From positions 465,062,001 through 465,126,000 of the forward strand of contig NC_067399.1 of the NCBI RefSeq assembly GCF_016432865.1: DNA of 64,000 nucleotides, given 5' to 3'. Source of the stretch: Antechinus flavipes. Taxonomy: Eukaryota. Below, piece after piece: positions 4,401 to 45,698 of the stretch; the stretch's first letter is position 1, and the number at the start of each line of letters is the position of its first letter. The notes below the pieces were generated by a model. That model was not told where the DNA came from. It saw nothing but the letters and a program-made list of their open reading frames with translations, and searched no databases. The translations under genes were made by a program, and so were the position numbers.

Positions 4401-7114
4401 GAAAGAGAGACTTCTGGGAAATTCCCGTCCATCCCCTGTTTCTTAGTAGCCCGTATTCAATAGTTCAAGCTAAAGTTGTCCGAGGCATACTAGCTCAAGG
4501 ACAATGGTGATATTTGATTTCTCTCCATCTACATCTCCCCACAAAGTTGGCAGGATTTGACATATAATTATCTTATTTTGCAAACAATATTTACCCTAAT
4601 AAGAACTACTAAGAGCAAGTGTCAAATGTAAGCCCAGGCTTGTAAACTAAGCCCTGCATAAGAAAATCACTTGATATTGCCAGACTTTTACATGTTAAAT
4701 GACTATTCTTTAGACCTATTCTAAGTCTAAAATTGTATGATAGCCCCTTGAATTGGGAAGAAAGTATTTTTCAAATATTGAACTGAATTAAGATGTTCAA
4801 TCTCCAAAAATGTTATTTTTTATGAATCATTCTATCTACCCATGTAATGTTTTAAATTTTAAAACATGAAACTCATGGGGGAAAATACTTAGTAGATACA
4901 CAAATCTATTGCTATAGATTTAAAAGCAGTCTTATACTTAAATTTTTTTTTCTTTTAAAATTCCCTGCTCCATTTTGACCATTAAAAACAAGCAATTACG
5001 TAGTTGTTGATAAAATGTTCTGTTGCTATGTTTTTGAAATGAAGGAACTCCCATGTTACAGAATAAACCAAAGGTAATATAAAAATTGCTTAATGGCTGA
5101 CTGACCAAAGCACTTCACCCATCTTGAATCTCTTTCCTCATTTGTAAATTGAAATAATACTTACTCTGCCTACCTCAGTGTTAATGTGAATTTATGTATT
5201 TGTTAGATTATAAAGTTTGCAAGGAAAATATTTGTGTAAACCGCAAAGTCCTGCCTTTTCTTGAAAATTCACAAATTCCCCCAAACCCATCAATGGTTTA
5301 TCCAACCTCCATTTAAATATCCTAAGTATTAAAAAGTTAGGTATATTTGAGAAAATGATACAAGTCAGGTGAACAAAAGAGGTATTTCATTTAGAAGAAA
5401 TCAGTTTTCTTCAAGATTTTTAAAACAAATATAATAAAGTTAAAACTTTAATTCATGGGCCTTTCAATTTTCTCTTGTCCATGGGGGGGGAAAAAAAAAA
5501 ACCAAAACATTGCATTTCTCTACAAAGAAAAATTTATATTCTATATTAAAAAATATTATAAAAGGAACTTAGCATAGCATCTCGTATATAGTAGGTACTA
5601 GATAAATGTTTCTTTTTCTGTCCCCTTTTCTACCCAAACACACCTGCTTTTCTAAAATTAGGTTTCATTTTCCAAAGCTTATTTATATCATGCAAGTAGA
5701 CACTGTTGAGAATTCCTTCTTGTGGAAACATTGTTATTGGAAAATACAACCAATATTTCTAACCTTTCTCTCCATTTCAAAGATTTAAAAGTGCTTTATC
5801 AAAGGATTCTCATGACATAAGGATATGTGTGATACACATATACATATATACATATGTATAGATGTGTGTTTATGTCAGTATCAAAATTAGTTACAATTGG
5901 AAAGAAAATATTTTTCAAATATTGAACTGGGTTAAGATATACATTCCCCCAAAATGTTATTCCTTATGAATCATTCTGGCCACCCATAAAATGTCTTAAA
6001 TTTTAAAAACATTAAACTATTAATGAGGAAAAATAAAGATTCAAAGTAAATCTCAAGAAAATTTCATCTGAAAGGTAAAGTTTATCTAAATACAATCATT
6101 TTAGAGATCCAGGTCAAAAGCAGTTAAAATTGCGAAAAAGTGAGATCCTTAAAGGCAATATTCTTATTTTATTTAACCATATTATTTGATATATTTTGGG
6201 TAAGGCCCTCTTTACCTGTTTCATCATCTATCATATCAGGATAATAACTGTACTTCCTATTTCATCAGATTTTTGTAAGTAAAGTTTTTTGCAAAAATGC
6301 AAAATATAGCACATAAGCCTTTTTCTCCACTCATAAATGATAACTTTACAAATGTTTAGTGAATATTTTCTAACAGAGAAAAAAATAACTATTTTGGTTA
6401 AATTCTAAAACTACTACATTTACAACATTTTAGATAGATCTATGAATCCCTCTCAAGTTTCCCATCCATTAGCTCAAATGATCAGTAAAATTTAAATTCA
6501 CAAATTAGAGCTAATACCTTACAAATCAAATTCACTCTCTTTATTATGCAGATATGGGAGAGAGAGTGGTGGAAATGCAGATATGGCCCAGAAAATCTAA
6601 ATGACATTTTCAAAACTTACGATTCTGTGTTTCTATTGTGATTTCCACATTGAACTGATGAAATGTAATCATTTAGCAATTATATATTAATTGATCTTCA
6701 GCTAATGGATGGCAGGAGCTATTGAAAGGCCTTCCTTTAATGTAAGGCAGACACACTAAGAAGTCTTAAAATGGGAAATTCATTTAACTTCTCAGTATCC
6801 CCAGGCAATAAAACTATTAAAGAAGAGACAATATTGCTTTTCCACAATCCTACAGGGATAGTCCATAATGGAAATTTCCCTACACATGCTGAAATCAGTT
6901 TTGGAAATTTTTTTTTTTTTATCTTGTTTAAAGCCTTACAAATAGCTGAAATGTAAAACACTTGAAAATAATAGTTTCAAAAGAAATATCCCACAGAATG
7001 CCTACAATAACATTAGAATGGGATGATGGAAAGGATAACATTTGCCTTTTAGGTTTATTTGTATTTTTTCAGTTTTCTTACACAACATAATTGCCACATT
7101 GCAGGAGGCACAAC

Positions 7115-9564: not shown

Positions 9565-10845
9565 TTAATCATAGTCTATTTTGACTTTTGTGATGATATC
9601 AAGGTTTGCCCTTTCACCACTATTTCTCCCATGAACAGAGGTCAAGTGTTTTTTGAGGGCAGATTTGTGCTTGAAGTCCATGTCACAACAGTGGCACTTA
9701 TATGGGCGATCTCCACTGTGAATGTTCAAGTGGTCCTGAAGAGTGCTCTTGGCAGTAAATGTCTTTAAACACACAGAACACTGGAATGGCCGTATGCCCA
9801 TATGTCCTCGAATATGTCGATTAAGATTTTTCTTCTGTGTAAATGTTTTTCCACATTGCAAACACAAAAACAGTTTGTGCATTTTCAGATGGCGCAGATA
9901 GTTTTCAAGATGAAGAAATCCTCGTGGACACTTAGGGCACTGGTGTCGCCAGGAATAACCCTCTTCTAAACTTTGAAGCCCATTTGTTACACCAACATTG
10001 CCTTCTGTACTTTCACCAATAAACCCCTGAAAGTGACTTCCAGGAACTTCTGTCATCCTACTTTCCACTGTCGAATTAATAAGTGAATGCTGTGTTTCGG
10101 GAAAATATATATTTGTTTTTGAAGAAGTACAAGGTTGTGAAAACTGCTCACTTTCTACAGTAGGCACATTGATAGAATCCATTCGGAAGATGCAAATTTC
10201 ATCATTTTTATACCCTATTTCAACTGCTGAAATCTCTGATGTTTTCATATCTTTTTTGTCCAATATCAAGCCCTGTATAGTAGGCTGCAAAACATTGTCT
10301 TTTTCTTGTTTAACTTGGATGTCCAAATTTACAGGACTGTCTTCAGAAATCTCAATTATTTCACAGTCTTTCTCTAAATTTTCATCTTCATCCTTTAGTT
10401 CTGGATAAGAGGAATGACATGTCTCAGCACCCTGGCTATTGTTCTTCATGGAAGAATCTATTTCCAAATACTTGGACAAAGCTTCTGTGCACTTCTCCAC
10501 AATATGTACCATTTGAAGGTAACTTGCAGCAGTCAAATATTTCAAAAGCTCTTTCCTTTTAACCTCCAATGCACCAGTATAACAAGAGAGCAATAACTTT
10601 CTGCCAATCTCTGCACTCTGCAAGATGGTGATTCTGACCTGCTTTGACTGGTTGAGTAAAAACTGATCTCTCATGAAAGTAGAGCAAGCAGCAAAAATCA
10701 CTTTGTGGCCCTGGAATTCCGTGTCATTGATATAGATGGATACATCACAAAATAAATTCTGCTGTCTCAAGAGGTTCATTTTCTGTAGGACAGCATCACC
10801 TTGCTGCTCAAATTGGAAGTGCAGGACATCAGATTCAGCAGCCAT
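9565..10845 (-). CDS. ZBTB6: Zinc finger and BTB domain protein 6, single coding exon, 426 aa
   Basis: MAAESDVLHFQFEQQGD... N-terminal BTB domain plus four C2H2 fingers (HQCPKC...H, FLCLQC, FQCSVC, YKCHCC), matching recalled human ZBTB6. ATG at 10845-10843 lies 7 nt after acceptor ttttttttaataag|TGTGACC (exon starts 10852). Confidence 0.96.
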   Translation of the reverse strand: MAAESDVLHFQFEQQGDAVLQKMNLLRQQNLFCDVSIYINDTEFQGHKVIFAACSTFMRDQFLLNQSKQVRITILQSAEIGRKLLLSCYTGALEVKRKELLKYLTAASYLQMVHIVEKCTEALSKYLEIDSSMKNNSQGAETCHSSYPELKDEDENLEKDCEIIEISEDSPVNLDIQVKQEKDNVLQPTIQGLILDKKDMKTSEISAVEIGYKNDEICIFRMDSINVPTVESEQFSQPCTSSKTNIYFPETQHSLINSTVESRMTEVPGSHFQGFIGESTEGNVGVTNGLQSLEEGYSWRHQCPKCPRGFLHLENYLRHLKMHKLFLCLQCGKTFTQKKNLNRHIRGHMGIRPFQCSVCLKTFTAKSTLQDHLNIHSGDRPYKCHCCDMDFKHKSALKKHLTSVHGRNSGERANLDIITKVKIDYD

Positions 10846-19523: not shown

Positions 19524-20849
19524 TTAATTAACACAAGTACCATCACTCCTTATAGTCAGTACAGCCTGGGCCAGTTTACCTGCATCTAATACCTGGGATG
19601 CATCTGATGGCTGCTGGCACCCTTTAGTTTCTGTTACTGTGGTACAAGCAAAAGAATCAAAATCCACTGTGAGGTCTTGCACATTTCTTTCATTAGCATT
19701 ATCAAAGCTGTTTTTACNNNNNNNNNNNNNNNNNNNNNNNNNNNNNNNNNNNNNNNNNNNNNNNNNNNNNNNNNNNNNNNNNNNNNNNNNNNNNNNNNNN
19801 NNNNNNNNNNNNNNNNNNNNNNNNNNNNNNNNNNNNNNNNNNNNNNNNNNNNNNNNNCAGATTTTACACTGAAAAGGTTTGATGCCTGCATGTACTCGCA
19901 TATGTCGGTGGAGGTTGCCTTTCTGAGTGAATGTTTTTCCGCAGAGTAAACACATAAAGAGTTTATGCATTTTTAAGTGGTTAGCATAGTTCTCTAGATG
20001 ACGAAACACCCTGGTACACTTTGGGCACTGGTGATGCCACTGAAGGCCTTTGTCTATGCCACGATTATTAGGACCAAACAAGTCTTTAGAGGCCATAATG
20101 ATATTATCACTACCTGCATAAGAAAGAGCATAATTGTGGAGATGGTTTTGTTCAATTTCATTTACTCTGTTTTCCACAGTTGAATTAATGAAGGAGTGCT
20201 GGGGTTCTGAGGAATGTAAAGCAGATGGTTCAGAAGAAATAAACTGATTTTGATCTTTTTTATTCCTAACTTCTGAAACTTCCCCAATTGATTCTACTTT
20301 AACAATCTGAATGTCACTGTCCTCCATGTCCATACTATCCTCAGAGGGTTGAATACAGGGGGAATCCTGCTCCTGTGAGTCTCTGTCATCTACCTGCTGT
20401 TCTTTTGTCTCTGAAGAATCACTCTGCTGTTCACATTCCTCTTTGCCTTCCAAAGACTGCTTGGGCTTTATAAACTTCCAAAGGGCCTGTGTGCATCGTT
20501 CTACAATGTGGCTCATCTGAAGAAAGCTTGCAGCTGTCAAATAATTTACCAGTTCCATCTCAGGAAATTCCAGAATGCCACTATAACAGGATAGTAGCAA
20601 TTGTCTCCCCACTTCTGATCTCTGCAATATGGAAATCTTTATTTCTCTGGAATCATTCAGTAAAAACTGGTCTCTTAGGAAGGGTGAGCCTGCGGCAAAC
20701 ACAATTTTATGTCCCTGAACCTCAATATCATCTATATGAACTGCGACGTCACAAAACTTATTTTCTTCTCTTAACTTGTTCATTTTTTGTAACATTGAAT
20801 CTCCATAATTTTCAAACTTGAAGCGAAGGAGATCTGATCTTTCAGACAT
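19524..20849 (-). CDS. ZBTB26: Zinc finger and BTB domain protein 26, single coding exon, 441 aa including the gap
   Basis: MSERSDLLRFKFENYGDSMLQKMNKLREENKFCD... BTB domain, HQCPKC/FMCLLC/FQCKI fingers and ...RSDGTCVN terminus match recalled human ZBTB26. ATG at 20849-20847 lies 10 nt after acceptor ccctttag|GTCTGCCACA (exon starts 20859). Confidence 0.96.
   Translation of the reverse strand: MSERSDLLRFKFENYGDSMLQKMNKLREENKFCDVAVHIDDIEVQGHKIVFAAGSPFLRDQFLLNDSREIKISILQRSEVGRQLLLSCYSGILEFPEMELVNYLTAASFLQMSHIVERCTQALWKFIKPKQSLEGKEECEQQSDSSETKEQQVDDRDSQEQDSPCIQPSEDSMDMEDSDIQIVKVESIGEVSEVRNKKDQNQFISSEPSALHSSEPQHSFINSTVENRVNEIEQNHLHNYALSYAGSDNIIMASKDLFGPNNRGIDKGLQWHHQCPKCTRVFRHLENYANHLKMHKLFMCLLCGKTFTQKGNLHRHMRVHAGIKPFQCKIXXXXXXXXXXXXXXXXXXXXXXXXXXXXXXXXXXXXXXXXXXXXXXXXKNSFDNANERNVQDLTVDFDSFACTTVTETKGCQQPSDASQVLDAGKLAQAVLTIRSDGTCVN
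19718..19857. other. Assembly gap of 140 N inside ZBTB26 zinc fingers 3-4
   Basis: Run of N; reading frame is preserved across it. Confidence 0.99.
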
Positions 20850-21048
20850 TGTGGCAGACCTAAAGGGTGGAAATGTAGAGATGTTGAGATAGGGGAAAAA
20901 AAAGTCAAAAATGTAAGAAACCTGGGCTTGATTTGGGGAAAAAAAAAAAAAATTACCCATTTGCTTTTTAGGAAATGTTCTTAGAAAGAAGATAGCTTTC
21001 CAAGACAACCAAAAAATTAACCCTTTTCAACAGTGTCAAAAGTACTTA

Positions 21049-21934
21049 CGAGCCCAGATTAATAGAGGAAGAAGTAAATTTCTTAAACAATCCCATTTTA
21101 GAAAAAGAAATAGAAGAAGCTATTAATAAACTCCCTAAGAAAAAATCCCCAGGACCAGATGGATTTACATGTGAATTCTACCAAACATTTAAAGAACAAT
21201 TAACTCCAATGCCATATAAACTATTTGAAAAAATAGGGAATGAAGGAATCCTACCAAATTCCTTTTATGACACAGCAATGGTAATGATACCTAAACCAGG
21301 CAGGACAAAAAAAGAGAAAGAAAATTATAGACCAAGCTCCCTAATGAATATTGATGCAAAAATCTTAAATAAAATATTAGCAAAAAGATTACAGAAAATC
21401 ATCCCCAGGATAATACACCATAACCAAGTAGGATTTATACCAGGAATGCAGGACTGGTTCAATATTAGGAAAACTATTAGCATAATTAACTATATCAATA
21501 ACCAAATTAACAAAAACCATATGAACATTTCAATAGATGCAGAAAAAGCATTTATAATGTCCAACACCCATTCCTTTTAAAAACACTAGAGAGTATAGTA
21601 ATAAATGGACTTTTCCTTTAAATAGTCATTAGCATCTATTTAAAATCATCAGTAAGCATCATATGTAATGGGGATAAACTGGAGCCATTTCCAATAAGAT
21701 CAGGAGTGAAACACAATTGCCCACTATCCCCAAGTTTAGCACCAAAAATTATAAAGCAAAGTAATTTTAAATCACAGAACAAAACCTTTTGAGAGTTTAC
21801 TCATTACAGGTTCCATTAGGCCTTACCATTGTCTAGCCCAAACCAATATTTCCTTCTGTGGAATCATTAGGGAATTACTATTCAATATTGTATTAGAAAT
21901 GCTAGCTTTGGCAATAAGAGATGAAAAAGAGGTT
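21049..21934 (+). mobile_element. Internal L1 ORF2 (reverse transcriptase) fragment, interrupted at 21735-21874
   Basis: ORF 21209-21580 ...[24 protein letters not shown]...[16 protein letters not shown]...SIDAEKAF is L1 RT; flanked by direct repeat AAAAGTACTTA (21038-21048, 21935-21945). Confidence 0.92.
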
Positions 21935-22889
21935 AAAAGTACTTAGAAGTGGAAAAATAAATAGCTCAACACTTCTCTTTGATCAGTACTTATAATAAGA
22001 ACTGCAAATCATTCATCAATTCAAAGGCATTTTTCCTATCTTCAAATAAAAATCTGACCAGATTTTAATAATAAACTGTAATGAATCCAAACAAGTTCAG
22101 TTAACTACTGAGTTAGATTTTACTCAGTACTAAGAACTACAACTCAAGGTTTTCATGTTCTCCTCAAGGTAAGGCCAAACGCTGGCAAAGATGCTTGCTT
22201 CTCATGAGAAGAAAAGAAAAATCTCATTGATTTTCCTCTTAAAATATTGCAAACAACTTGACTGTCTTATCCCAGGACAGATGACAAAATGGCAGGAATA
22301 TAAAAGGGTAGAAATATTAAAAAAAAAAAAAAGTCAAAAATGAATTAAAGGATTTCTGGGAAAATAATAATTCTAGTAATAGAAAAACTGGGTTGGAGGT
22401 ACAAATAGAAGGAAGAGGTAAAAGAGCCAAAAAAACTTTAAAACTCCACGGAGTTTTTTGGCATTTTATATAATTTTATAGAGACAGTATAAAAGCTTAT
22501 CAATACCTTGCAAGCAACATAAATAACAAATACCACAGTTTAGATATCAAAAGATGTCAGATGATATAGAAGAGAAAATATTGCATTTGTGGCAAAGAAA
22601 ACCCTTTATAAAAATCTCAATTATATCAAGACAATTGGTGACAACTTAGAAAGGAAAAAAATTAAGGATGAGAATTCATTTCTATCCTGTACTTTTAAGT
22701 TTTAAATATTTATTTAAAATGTCTATTCTAAAAATACATAGCATTATAATTTAGCACCAAAAATTATAAAGCAAAGTAATTTTAAATCACAGAACAAAAC
22801 CTTTTGAGAGTTTACTCATTCCAGGTTCCATTAGGCCTTACCATTGTCTAGCCCAAACCAATATTTCCTTCTGTGGAATCATTAGGGAA
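21735..22889 (+). repeat. 140-bp dispersed direct repeat (21735-21874 and 22750-22889)
   Basis: Base-by-base comparison gives 139/140 identity; the only mismatch is a21806 vs c22821; offset 1015 bp. Confidence 0.95.
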
Positions 22890-23311
22890 AGTTAATTGCT
22901 GAAAATCATCCAAATACGTTTGAATATTCTTGCCAACAAGACAGATAGGTCCAATCTCCCTCTCATGGTTTAAGAAGCAAGTGCTATTATTTGCTTTATA
23001 TTCATTGGTTTTATGAAAATTATCTTTCTAAAAGCAATGTGAATATTGTAAAGACAATCAATTTTGAAAGAACTGAGAAATCTAATCAACACAATGACCA
23101 ACCACCATTTCAGAGGACTAATGATGAAACAGGCCATCTACATTCCAATGGAGAGAGATGATGGACTCAAAGTACAGATGAAGATTTTTTAATTTTTAAT
23201 ATGGTCAATGAAGAAATTTGTTTGATTACACATGTTTATAATAAGGGATATTGGTTTTTTCCTTTCTCAGTAGAGAAGAAGAGAGAATGATGGAAAGAAG
23301 GTAAGATTATG

Positions 23312-23472
23312 GGGGATTTTGGGAGGGGTTTTTTTGGCTGAGGCAGTTGGGGTTAAGTGACTTGCCAGCATCACACAGATAGGAACTATTAAGTGTCTGA
23401 GATGAGATTTGAACTCAGGTCCTCCTGACTTCAGAGCTGGTGCTCTATCCACTGTACCACCTACCTGCCTCT
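23312..23472 (-). mobile_element. WSINE1-type marsupial CORE-SINE
   Basis: ggggttaagtgacttgcc...tttgaactcaggtcctcctgacttcagagctggtgctctatccactg; TSD AGATTATG at 23304-23311 and 23473-23480. Confidence 0.85.
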
Positions 23473-27990: not shown

Positions 27991-28130
27991 TTTTTTTTTT
28001 TTTTTTTTTTGCTTAGACAATTGGGGTTTAATTGACTTGCCCAGGGACACAAAGCTAGGAAGTGTCTGAGACCATATTTGAACTCTGGTCCTTCTGACTT
28101 CAGGGATGGTGGGAGCCACCTACTTGCCTC
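27991..28130 (-). mobile_element. WSINE1-type SINE with A20 tail, nested in a MIR-like element (~27880-28180)
   Basis: T20 followed by gcttagacaattggggtttaattgacttgcccaggg...tttgaactctggtccttctgac. Confidence 0.8.
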
Positions 28131-41130: not shown

Positions 41131-42199
41131 ATTTTATGTAATTGAAAGAAAACATATATGTATATGCACATATATGTATTTTAAAGGAATTCTGCTAATA
41201 GCTGCATGTTGATAGTAGGTTCTAGTAAAGGCATAAGGGAGGCATGTTTCTAGATGGGAAAAGTGGAGTAGGTAAGGAAAGATTGAAGTTGGAGGAGGTG
41301 GTAAGAGGTTAAAGAGAACTAGCATCCAGATAAGGAAACAATGGGATTATGGACAAGTAGAGGAATTAGCTTTGACAGTCGTTAAAAAATGGTTCACTAG
41401 CATGGAAACAAGAACAGTAAAGGGAGAGAGTCGAGATAACCCAGGATTGGAGGTTTATATAACATAAGTGGCTATTTCCATGATTTATACCTTATATTTC
41501 CAAATTCTGACAACTCTATAAGAACTGGTGCTTTCATAATAATAAATGTTCTGTACTGGTATGCAAAATTTCTTTTCCTTGAAAAAAAATTTTAAAATGC
41601 AGCCAGGATTGTAAGGAGCAAGTTTATCTCAGGTTAAATTAAATTGTATTGGGCAAAAGAAATCATGTTAAGCAGATTAACACTTCTGCCTAGTAGAGAT
41701 GAGTGAATCTCTTTTGCCTAGATTCAGTCCTGTTATATACTACTTCTGATTATGAATAAAATAGGATATAGCAAGTTTAAATTTATTCATATTTCTGCTT
41801 ATGACTATTTAGCCTCTTCAGGATAAGAAAAAGAATAATGATAATGCATTTTCCTACTTTATTGCAAGGTATTCAGTAATTAGAGCATAAGAAAAAAAAA
41901 CTTAGAAGATCTGGCTTTGAAACTTATCACCCATGTTTATTAGCCATATACTCCTGAACTTGTTTCCTTATCTAAAAATTGAATACTTATGCTACCTACT
42001 TCATAGAGTTGTTGAAAAATGTGAACTGCTGTTATTTATTATATCAGACAAGTGACCTTCTTAAAACCTGTAAAAAGCTATTTTCTTTTTATTTATTTTA
42101 TTTATCCTCTCTTAAACAATTTTTCAAGACAAGTTAGAAAATCTGGATTCCAATCCTAGTTCTGTTACAGTCTCATTTGCCTTGAGCAAATCAATTAAC

Positions 42200-42690: not shown

Positions 42691-43862
42691 GATAGATGAC
42701 ACAACTAAAAACTCTGAAATCCTATGGTTATATTAAAAAAAATCCATAGTCCTGAAAAAAGAACCCTTCCCAAAGTACATTGGGAACATTGCCTTTAGTA
42801 TTAAACTCCATATGTCTAGTATGAGTCTATTATATAGGAAGAGTCGTTGCATTTTGTGTTAGAGGACCTATAAATCTCTGCTGCTTCAAGTGATCACTTA
42901 ATGTTGTTTGACTACCTTGCTCATTCACCCTCACTTTAAAATGTTATTCCAGCCTTGTCTAGAACAAATCCTAGCTCCTCCTGCTCGTATCACTATACTT
43001 CAGAGAACGTCTTCTGCCAACTATTTTTGGTTTGCCCTCGGCATTCTGAAAATTAACAGAGGTCATTGTTAAGTTAGATAATGTTTATTATTATTTCATT
43101 TCTCTCAAGTATTGGCCACAGGTTAATTTGTTTTAATTTTCATTCAGCCACTTAGGTAAAAGAGAAATTTAATGTAGTATCCTGGAGCTGAACATAAAAG
43201 CACCTAAGCATGGTCTCATCTAAAAGGAACAGAATAATTGTTGTTGGTTGGAAAGAAAAACAATCTTTGAGTATTTCTGTAAAAGGCAAGGAATTTTTTT
43301 TTCACTTAATAACAAAAAACTATTTTTATACATAATTGGAATAAAATTAAATACTATTAAGCTTTCAGTAGTTTTCAACATTTCATCTTTATAAGATTTT
43401 GCATTCCATATTTTTTCTCCCTCTTACCTGTTCCTCCCCTTTTAAAGGAGAGGCATTCTAAAGGAATTTATTAGTATCATTTCAGTGATAACACTTCTCT
43501 AAAGGTGGGAACATCCAGGTCCAAATCCCAATTTTGCTACTAACTTCCTATGTTATTATAGGTGAGTCACTTCTGCCTTTCTGGGTTTGTTTCCTCCTCT
43601 GCAAAAATAAATAATTAATTTCTATCTCTAAATAAAATTTATAAGCAGCTCCATGTTGCTCTCATAGATTCACAATTCTAACTGGACAAATGAAGAAATC
43701 ATGTTAAGCACATTGATACTTCTTCCTAGTAGAAATGAGTCCCATGCTTTTCCCACACCACCACAGTAATTATTCCACGAAATGACTAAATTGTTTCCAT
43801 TCAGATAGAGCCCTCTTAAGAATATAATTGTTTTTTAATCCCAGACTTTTGCCTTGTGCATA

Positions 43863-43984: not shown

Positions 43985-45698
43985 TTGTTATTCAGTTGTT
44001 TCTGATTCTAAATGACTCAGTGATCATAGCATGTCCAGGTCTTTCTATTCTCCACTATTTCTTGAAGTCTGTCTAAGTTCATTTCTTTGTTTCAATGATC
44101 ATTTTTTTTTCCTTTCTTTCTTTCTTTTTTGCTGAAACAATTGGGATTAAGTGACTTGCCCAGGGTCACACAGCTAGGACGTGGTAAGTGTCTGAGGTTG
44201 GATTTGAACTCGGGTCCTCCTGACTTAAGGGCTGGTGCTCTATCCACTGCACCACTTAGTCACCCTGATTATTTTCCATAATCTTATCCTCTGCCAACTC
44301 CTTTTCTTATCTACAATTTTTCCCAACATCAAGGTCTTTTTCAGTGAGTTCCATCTTCTCATTATGTAGTCAAAGTATGTAAACTTCAGCTTCAGTATTT
44401 GACTTTCCGATGAAAAACTTGATTTTTGTATGTCTTGATTGATTTGATCTCCTTCTGTGCAAAGAACTTTCAAACATCTTGTCTATCACAGTAATTTGAA
44501 AGTGTTGATTCTATTATGCTTAGCTTTCCTAATAGTGCAACTTTCACAACCATATATTGCTTCTGGAAAAACTATCTCTTAAACTGTACAAACCTTTGTC
44601 AGAAAAGTAATATCTCTGTTTTTTTAATCTGTTGTCCTGAATTATCATAGCTTTACTTCCAAGGAGCAAGTGTCTTAATTACGTGACTACAATCTATTTT
44701 GATCTTTGAATTCACGGATATAAAATCTGACAGTGCTTCCATTTCGTTTCCTTTTGTTTACTGGGAAGCAATGGGACCAGTTGCCAAGATCTTAGTTTTC
44801 TTTTGATGTTAAGTTTCTAACCAGCTTTTACACTATCTTCTTTCATCCTCATCAAGAGACTTTTTAATTCTTCATTTTTTGCCAAAATAATGGTATCATC
44901 TTCATGTTGATATTTCTCTTGGCAAACAATTCCAGCGTTTGATTCATTTTTTATAATGTACTCTTTATATAAGTTAAATAAGATAACAACATACGGCCTT
45001 GTTGTACTTTTCCAATCTTAAGCCAGACAAGTGTTCCATGTTCAGTTCTGTTGTTTATTATCCTTGTTTATTGGTCTGTAAATTCCTCAAGAGACAAATA
45101 AGATGTGATCAGGTACTCCCATCTCTGGGAGTAATTTCTACAAAATTTTGTTGTGATCCACCCAGTCAAAGGCTTTCGTGTAGTCAGTGAAACAGAAGAG
45201 GGCATTTTTCTGGAACTCCTTTGTTTTTTCCACAATCCTGCAAATGTTGACAATTTGGTCTCTAGTCTAGCTTCCTTTTCAAAAACCAGCCTGCTCTTCT
45301 CATCATTCTGAGTTCTTATGTGGCTGAAGCCTATTTTTCAGAAGCTTAAGCATAATCTTACTGGTATGTGAAATGAGTGCAACTGTTCAATAATTTGAAC
45401 ATTTCTTGGCATTATTCTTCTTTAGAATTAGGACATGAACTAATCTTTTCCAATCTAATGGCTACTGTTATACCAGCTTTTAGAGTTTTAAATAGCTCTG
45501 CTGGAATTCCATCACTTCTACTTGCCTCATTGTTAGGAAGGCTTCACAAGACCCATTTGACTTCATGCTCCATGATAATATGACTCTAGATCAGTAATCA
45601 TACCATCATGGTTATCAGGGATGTTAAGGTCTTTCTTGTATCTCCTTTTGTGCATTCTTACCCCCTCTCCTTAATCTTTTCTGCTTCTGGTAAATCCC
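43985..45698 (-). mobile_element. BovB-like RTE LINE, 5'-truncated, covering the RT domain and 3' end
   Basis: Colinear with recalled BovB consensus, e.g. cttccaaggagcaagtgtct, tataagttaaataag, ttgtgatccacccagtcaaaggctt (YAKAFD.VDH-type motif), gaaatgagtgcaactg, ctggaattccatcac; ORFs are broken. Confidence 0.85.
44106..44265 (-). mobile_element. WSINE1-type SINE inserted into the BovB/RTE element
   Basis: attgggattaagtgacttgcccagggtcacacagctagg...ctctatccactgcaccacttag; imperfect TSD tgatYatttt at 44096-44105 and 44266-44275. Confidence 0.85.

What the first reader, a model, noticed from the sequence alone, without database searches (positions are those of the whole stretch)
21721..22889. 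140-bp copy of nearby genomic DNA inserted cleanly into the middle of an L1 RT fragment
Seen: 21735-21874 is 139/140 identical to 22750-22889, same orientation, 1015 bp downstream. Inside the L1 the insert splits ...cccactatccc|...|ttactattcaatattgtattagaaatgc. My recalled L1 consensus reads ccactatcaccattactattc here, so almost no L1 bases were lost and only a few nt (aag) were added. Inference: the RT or a repair polymerase jumped from L1 RNA onto the local chromosome and back during integration, or a later polymerase-theta-type templated insertion repaired a break. The near identity suggests a recent event. An assembly artefact is a real alternative, since the N gap 2 kb away is also exactly 140 nt.
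Basis: partly seen in the sequence, partly recalled or inferred. Interest (0 to 1): 0.72.

Follow-up and report, generated by a model that had tools for sequence, protein, structure and literature searches.

The report
Nearby DNA copied into dead L1
A 142-base patch, 140 bases of it copied from the same intron 1 kb away, sits cleanly inside a dead L1 element next to a marsupial ZBTB26 gene; it looks like an ordinary scar of DNA break repair, and I could not confirm it with sequencing reads.

Summary
Positions 21735-21874 and 22750-22889 are 139/140 identical, direct, 1015 bp apart and sharp-edged. They are the only near-identical pair in the 64 kb.

The insert splits an L1 ORF2 fragment exactly between the residues matching human ORF2p 665 and 666. 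No L1 base is lost or duplicated. There is no target-site duplication and no poly(A), only 2 bases of filler (ag).

The L1 is broken: a frameshift, stops, and nothing after residue ~687. The patch therefore entered pre-existing L1 DNA, and an L1 RT jump during integration is not supported.

The 140 N lie inside the ZBTB26 coding exon and keep it at 441 codons, so they are a mask and not a gap.

Best reading: a locally templated patch at one repaired break. A single 140-nt tract from 1 kb away with 1 nt of microhomology or less does not fit classic polymerase-theta insertions or microhomology-driven switching. It most resembles class 2 templated sequence insertions, but with a local donor.

The scan has noted the same kind of scar many times elsewhere in this genome. 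Known kind, low interest.

The parts
21040..21732 (+). Left part of a decayed L1 ORF2 (reverse transcriptase) fragment, ending with the codon that matches ORF2p residue 665
   Evidence: Translation. 21212-21577 hits Pfam RVT_1 at E 4e-14 and ORF2p residues 494-605. 21622-21732 matches residues 630-665. The frame changes between the two pieces and there are stops at 21578-21580 and 21619-21621. The left edge near 21040 is read from the translation only.
21733..21734 (+). Two filler bases (ag) at the left junction, matching neither the L1 nor the donor flank (donor has aa here)
   Evidence: Junction print-out; alignment A2.
21735..21874 (+). Inserted 140-nt copy
   Evidence: 139/140 identical to 22750-22889. 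It interrupts ORF2p between residues 665 and 666.
21875..21943 (+). Right part of the L1 ORF2 fragment (residues 666-687); L1 similarity ends here
   Evidence: E 1e-3, residues 666-687. No ORF2p match for 21961-22065.
22750..22889 (+). Donor segment in the same intron, 1015 bp downstream on the + strand
   Evidence: No other copy in the window. Not a known or structured RNA (Rfam blank; fold z-scores 0.06 and -1.5).
19524..20849 (-). ZBTB26 coding sequence (context). The L1 and both copies lie 0.9-2 kb upstream of its ATG, presumably in the 5'-UTR intron
   Evidence: Translation. Best hits are all ZBTB26, 88-92% identical. 441 codons to the stop. An AG acceptor-like site lies 10 nt upstream of the ATG, read; the upstream exon was not identified.
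19718..19857 (.). 140 N: a length-preserving mask inside the ZBTB26 zinc-finger coding region, unrelated to the repeat

Best explanation
After an L1 fragment had long been resident and had decayed in the intron upstream of the ZBTB26 coding exon, one break occurred in it, between the codons matching ORF2p residues 665 and 666. The break was closed with a patch of 2 untemplated bases plus a 140-nt copy of sequence lying 1015 bp away in the same orientation. The donor stayed in place, so the patch was made by synthesis and not by cut-and-paste.

The route I think most likely (about 40% within this class) is this. A 3' end at the break primed on the nearby duplex or on the sister chromatid with little or no homology. 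A fairly processive polymerase copied about 140 nt. The new strand was released and joined to the other end by end joining. This is synthesis-dependent 'filler DNA' repair. Because 3' ends are kept during resection, no target base was lost.

Other routes within the same class:
- a replicative double template switch (about 25%);
- a cDNA patch copied from the nascent ZBTB26 pre-mRNA, which contains both sites (about 20%);
- capture of a free DNA fragment (about 15%).

Shown: the copy, its exact position, the intact flanks, the filler, the absence of a target-site duplication or poly(A), and the decay of the L1. Inferred: the break, the polymerase, whether the template was DNA or RNA, and the timing.
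For: - Exact 139/140 copy with sharp edges; the only such pair in the 64 kb.
- L1 residues 665 and 666 flank the insert with no loss or duplication.
- 2-nt filler and at most 1 nt of shared sequence at either junction, as at end-joined breaks.
- No poly(A), no target-site duplication and no TTTT/A-like site at the junction.
- The L1 is truncated on both sides, frameshifted and stop-ridden, while the copy has one change, so the L1 is older than the insert.
- Donor and acceptor are 1 kb apart in the same orientation, which fits a local search by a broken end.
- Class 2 templated sequence insertions in people show the same junction features (PMC5110952).
- If the genome is the yellow-footed antechinus assembly, as earlier scan notes say, it was built from 100x PacBio reads with contig N50 51.8 Mb (PMC9290055). 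That leaves little room for a fabricated 142-nt insert.
Against:
- The age gap between L1 and insert rests on the L1's broken state, not on a measured divergence from a subfamily consensus.
- I could not check that the 140 nt is single-copy elsewhere in the genome.
- One mismatch in 140 dates poorly (95% interval 0.02-3.9%) and could equally be a copying error.
Confidence: 0.7

Rival explanations
1. Assembly or library artefact: the 142 nt is not in the animal's DNA, or is present on only a minority of molecules.
For: No reads could be laid. The scan has logged many similar 'templated insertions' in this one assembly (19 notes), which could reflect a pipeline quirk as well as biology. A single mismatch is also what a sequencing error would give.
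Against:
- An artefact that inserts 142 nt and resumes at exactly the next base, with 2 filler bases, is not a usual failure of long-read assembly or of polishing.
- The presumed assembly has 100x long reads and 50x short reads for polishing.
- Public runs of the best-matching organism hold 79-86% of the sampled 31-mers of 21500-23100, although this is not specific to the junctions.
Confidence: 0.12
2. The L1 reverse transcriptase switched template from L1 RNA to local chromosomal DNA or RNA and back while this L1 copy was being integrated.
For: L1 RT can switch templates, and chimeric retrocopies such as U6-L1 are known (my own knowledge). The insert lies inside an L1.
Against: - The L1 lacks its whole 3' part, poly(A) and target-site duplication and carries a frameshift and stops. 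The copy is 99.3% identical to its donor, so the two do not look the same age.
- A return to exactly the next nucleotide of the L1 RNA after 140 nt elsewhere is implausible.
Confidence: 0.03
3. Classic polymerase-theta end joining made the whole insert in one aborted synthesis round.
For: This pathway gives direct-repeat templated insertions copied from the other side of a break and adds untemplated bases. The copy is AT-rich (34% GC), as reported for such insertions (PMC7165422).
Against: Reported insertions are 3-30 bp from DNA flanking the break. Single tracts are rarely over 10 bp, and longer inserts are composites of several rounds. Here there is one 140-nt tract from 1 kb away, with at most 1 nt of microhomology.
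Confidence: 0.08
4. The 140 nt is a small dispersed repeat or mobile element, and the copy in the L1 came from another genomic copy and not from the neighbour.
For: A genome-wide copy number could not be obtained with the tools at hand.
Against: No other copy in the 64 kb. No terminal repeats, target-site duplication or poly(A). No Rfam match and no significant fold. A 99.3% match to a neighbour 1 kb away would be a large coincidence.
Confidence: 0.04

Closest known systems
Class 2 templated sequence insertions (TSIPs; Onozawa et al., reviewed in PMC5110952)
   Same: A copied patch closing a double-strand break. No target-site duplication, no poly(A), a few untemplated bases, little microhomology. 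Intronic transcribed sequence can be the donor. Heritable.
   Different: TSIP donors are by definition distant, often on another chromosome, and are thought to be RNA-derived. Here the donor is 1 kb away in the same intron, and RNA or DNA origin cannot be told apart.
Synthesis-dependent 'filler DNA' at end-joined breaks (plants, Drosophila SD-MMEJ; my own knowledge, not checked in a paper here)
   Same: Local donor within a few kb, copy-and-paste, donor retained, junctions with filler bases.
   Different: Those fillers are usually tens of bases and often patchworks primed at microhomologies. This is one long tract with almost none.
Polymerase-theta templated insertions (PMC7165422)
   Same: Direct-repeat copy of DNA from beside the break, AT-rich, untemplated additions.
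   Different: Length (140 nt against 3-30 bp), distance (1 kb against the immediate flank), single tract, microhomology of 1 nt or less.
MMBIR/FoSTeS templated insertions (MMB-TIs, PMC8421209)
   Same: Two template switches that return to the starting point. Such events accumulate as germline variants in non-genic DNA.
   Different: The signature searched for there is an inverted copy within 100 bp, with 2-12 bp of microhomology at most junctions. Here the copy is direct, 1 kb away, with 0-1 nt.
L1 RT template-switch chimeras (e.g. U6-L1 retrocopies; my own knowledge)
   Same: Foreign sequence joined to L1 sequence.
   Different: Those are end-to-end fusions made during one retrotransposition, with poly(A) and target-site duplication. 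They are not a clean internal insert in a decayed, 3'-truncated L1.

Membership tests
Class 1 TSIP / L1-mediated (TPRT) insertion | Target-site duplication of at least 5 bp at both junctions | tested here: not met
   L1 residues 665 and 666 flank the insert with no repeated bases.
Class 1 TSIP / L1-mediated (TPRT) insertion | Poly(A) tail after a polyadenylation signal, and insertion at a TTTT/A-like site | tested here: not met
   The insert ends ...tagggaa directly on L1 sequence. The site reads cccca|ttact.
Class 2 TSIP (break patch) | No TSD and no poly(A); end-joining features (microdeletion, microhomology or untemplated bases) at the junctions | tested here: met
   2-nt filler, 0-1 nt of microhomology, no deletion. 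Definition from PMC5110952.
Class 2 TSIP (break patch) | Donor in a distant genomic region | tested here: not met
   The donor is 1015 bp away in the same intron.
Class 2 TSIP (break patch) | Insertion polymorphic or heritable in the population | not testable with these tools
   Read laying spent; no other genomes reachable.
Polymerase-theta templated insertion (TINS) | 3-30 bp identical to DNA flanking the break; single synthesis tracts short | tested here: not met
   One 140-nt tract from 1 kb away, against PMC7165422.
Polymerase-theta templated insertion (TINS) | Dependence on POLQ | not testable with these tools
   Needs genetics.
MMBIR / FoSTeS template switch | Microhomology (typically 2-12 bp) at each switch point | tested here: not met
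   At most 1 nt at either junction, and filler at the left one. Figures from PMC8421209.
L1 (LINE-1) ORF2 fragment, the host of the insert | Reverse-transcriptase domain homologous to ORF2p | tested here: met
   Pfam RVT_1 at E 4e-14. ORF2p at E 5e-47 over residues 494-605, plus 630-665 and 666-687.
Small RNA retrocopy (snoRNA or other) | Match to an RNA family, or a significantly stable fold | tested here: not met
   Rfam blank over the segment. Fold z-scores 0.06 and -1.5.

The most novel reading that the evidence does not exclude
This is one of many long (about 60-550 nt), single-tract copies taken from 0.5-8 kb away that the scan keeps finding in this dasyurid genome. If a like-for-like census showed a real excess over other mammals, it would point to a lineage-specific bias in break repair: a processive, homology-poor copy-and-paste route. 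That would be of interest in a family known for transmissible and frequent cancers.
Probability: 0.1. Interest if true: 0.55.

Novelty: new member of a known kind. Interest (0 to 1): 0.2.

Why it matters
On its own it matters little. It is a neutral scar in an intron, inside a dead retroelement, with no sign of function.

It is a clean textbook example, because the L1 reading frame serves as a ruler showing that not one target base was lost. It also shows that long single-tract local copies can form with almost no microhomology, which none of the standard signatures (polymerase theta, MMBIR) describes well.

The two 140-nt direct repeats could also mediate a later 1-kb deletion. Any wider value lies in a genome-wide count of such events, not in this instance.

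Tried and rejected

2. Orthologous loci.
- The ZBTB26 N-terminal 330 aa found only clusters represented by birds, reptiles and placentals.
- Listing ten clusters showed no marsupial member.
- I did not use a full ZBTB26 protein, because that would have meant looking up the masked letters.

3. Exact look-up of the 48-aa ORF that crosses the left junction, with five control ORFs from the locus: none on record, so uninformative.

4. A metagenome scan for a 29-nt word of the segment gave nothing.

5. Pfam on the two short L1 pieces was blank. The PDB sequence search then settled the contiguity.

6. My recollection that the L1 continues to about 22065 was not supported.

7. A small-RNA or snoRNA retrocopy was rejected.

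8. A target-site duplication or tandem duplication reading was rejected. R...R' flanking an 875-bp insert would require L1 residues 665 and 666 to meet by chance.

9. The two bases after the donor (ag, 22890-22891) equal the filler at the left junction. This hints at a circular permutation, but it is a 1-in-16 coincidence and I did not pursue it.

10. I ran no further search on dating the L1, because the result would not have changed the verdict.

Full report
**What is in the sequence**

The window holds two 140-nt stretches, 21735-21874 and 22750-22889. They are identical at 139 positions (A at 21806, C at 22821), lie in the same orientation, and are 1015 bp apart. A pairwise alignment with 45-nt flanks shows identity falling to random at both edges. 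Self-comparison of the whole 64 kb finds no other pair above 91% identity apart from a simple repeat, and no third copy of this segment.

**Setting**

On the minus strand, 20849 down to 19524 is the ZBTB26 coding sequence. The first 330 codons hit only ZBTB26 proteins at 88-92% identity. A paralogue, ZBTB6, lies at 9568-10845 on the same strand. The repeat pair lies 0.9-2 kb upstream of the ZBTB26 ATG, presumably in the 5'-UTR intron. I inferred this from an AG acceptor-like site 10 nt before the ATG; I did not find the upstream exon.

**The N run**

It sits inside this coding exon. Counting the N as 140 real bases gives an in-frame CDS of exactly 441 codons, and only that frame reads on after the N. 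441 is the length of most ZBTB26 orthologues listed. The N run is therefore a length-preserving mask and not a gap.

**The L1 and the exact site**

From about 21040 the + strand encodes an L1 ORF2 fragment.
- 21212-21577 matches Pfam RVT_1 (E 4e-14) and human ORF2p residues 494-605 (E 5e-47).
- After a frameshift and stops, 21622-21732 matches residues 630-665.
- On the far side of the insert, 21875-21943 matches residues 666-687.

The two pieces abut residue to residue and are in frame once 21733-21874 is set aside. The insert is thus 142 nt: ag, then the 140-nt copy. No L1 base is lost or duplicated.

Beyond residue ~687 no ORF2p similarity is found. The catalytic centre downstream, the 3' UTR and the poly(A) are all missing. 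The junctions read cccca|ag|tttagc on the left and tagggaa|ttacta on the right. The donor flanks are ttataa|tttagc and tagggaa|agttaa. At most one base is shared at either junction. There is no target-site duplication, no A-tail and no TTTT/A-like site.

**What the segment is not**

Rfam finds nothing in it. Its fold is no better than shuffled sequence on either strand (z 0.06 and -1.5). It has no terminal repeats. It is not a small-RNA retrocopy or an obvious mobile element, although I could not count its copies genome-wide.

**Mechanism**

The donor is retained, so the patch was synthesised. The L1 is a broken piece truncated at both ends, whereas the copy has one change in 140 (95% interval 0.02-3.9%). 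The patch therefore entered DNA that was already an old L1.

Among repair routes, three published signatures can be compared.
- Classic polymerase-theta insertions are 3-30 bp from the immediate flank, with tracts rarely over 10 bp (PMC7165422). Not met.
- MMBIR-type insertions, as catalogued, are inverted, within 100 bp, and use 2-12 bp of microhomology (PMC8421209). Not met.
- The junctions do match class 2 templated sequence insertions: no duplication, no poly(A), untemplated bases (PMC5110952). Those donors, however, are distant.

I therefore read it as a locally templated break patch sealed by end joining. The most likely route is synthesis primed from one break end on the nearby duplex or the sister chromatid. 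This keeps both 3' ends and so explains the zero loss. A replicative double switch, a cDNA patch from the nascent ZBTB26 pre-mRNA (which contains both sites) and capture of a free fragment remain open. The sequence cannot tell them apart.

**Real or artefact**

I could not test this directly.
- The look-up of sequencing runs listed runs of seven coded organisms. They hold from 86% down to 17% of the sampled words, a ready-made series for an empty-site test.
The cap is one.
- Cluster listings showed no marsupial ZBTB26.
- Exact look-ups of a junction-crossing ORF and five controls were all blank, as was a metagenome scan.

Indirect points favour reality. An artefact that inserts 142 nt with 2 filler bases and resumes at the very next base is unusual.

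The identity of the assembly also bears on this.
- Earlier scan notes call the genome the yellow-footed antechinus.
- The offsets quoted put this piece at 601 Mb or more. That fits the published chromosome sizes of 86.6-727.3 Mb.
- That assembly was made from 100x PacBio reads (canu correction, wtdbg2) polished with 50x short reads, with contig N50 51.8 Mb (PMC9290055).

I put an artefact at about 12%.

**Context from the scan**

The same kind of event has been noted repeatedly elsewhere in this genome. There are 19 notes on templated insertions, among them four 75-170-bp copies within one 64-kb window and an 83-bp two-piece insert. These are unchecked leads. They suggest that this is one more member of a class the scan already knows, and that the only open question of interest is whether the class is unusually frequent in this lineage or in this assembly.

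**Verdict**

- The N-gap argument for an artefact is refuted, but an artefact is not excluded.
- It is a new member of a known kind, of low interest.

Noticed in passing
window 4751-4887 and 5895-6035: A second local direct pair of similar size and spacing: about 140 nt, 82% identical, 1144 bp apart, with fairly sharp edges and no other copy in the window. It could be an older event of the same kind or two copies of a rare repeat.
   Followed up: partly
window 41657-41704 and 43693-43740: A 48-nt direct pair, 90% identical, 2036 bp apart, with no other copy in the window.
   Followed up: no
window 22890-22891 and 21733-21734: The two bases that follow the donor (ag) are the same as the two filler bases in front of the inserted copy. 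The insert therefore reads like the 142-nt donor stretch 22750-22891 rotated by two bases. This is a 1-in-16 coincidence unless other events in the genome show the same thing.
   Followed up: no
window 21735-21874 and 22750-22889, minus strand: Read in the sense of the ZBTB26 pre-mRNA, the segment contains AUG|GUAAGG, a good 5' splice-site-like motif, which the insertion duplicates within the intron. There is no evidence that either copy is used.
   Followed up: no
window 9568-10845 (-) and 19524-20849 (-): ZBTB6 and ZBTB26 lie in tandem on the same strand, about 9 kb apart. Their DNA similarity is still detectable (66-72% over parts of the BTB and zinc-finger regions).
   Followed up: partly
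window 22659-22709 (+): A weak match to the C/D-box family snoZ175 (25.8 bits against a gathering score of 43, E 0.49), just upstream of the donor segment. Most likely chance.
   Followed up: no
window 23329-23442, 28003-28111, 44125-44195: Copies of a SINE-like repeat (78-82% identical) bound the unique stretch to the right of the donor.
   Followed up: no
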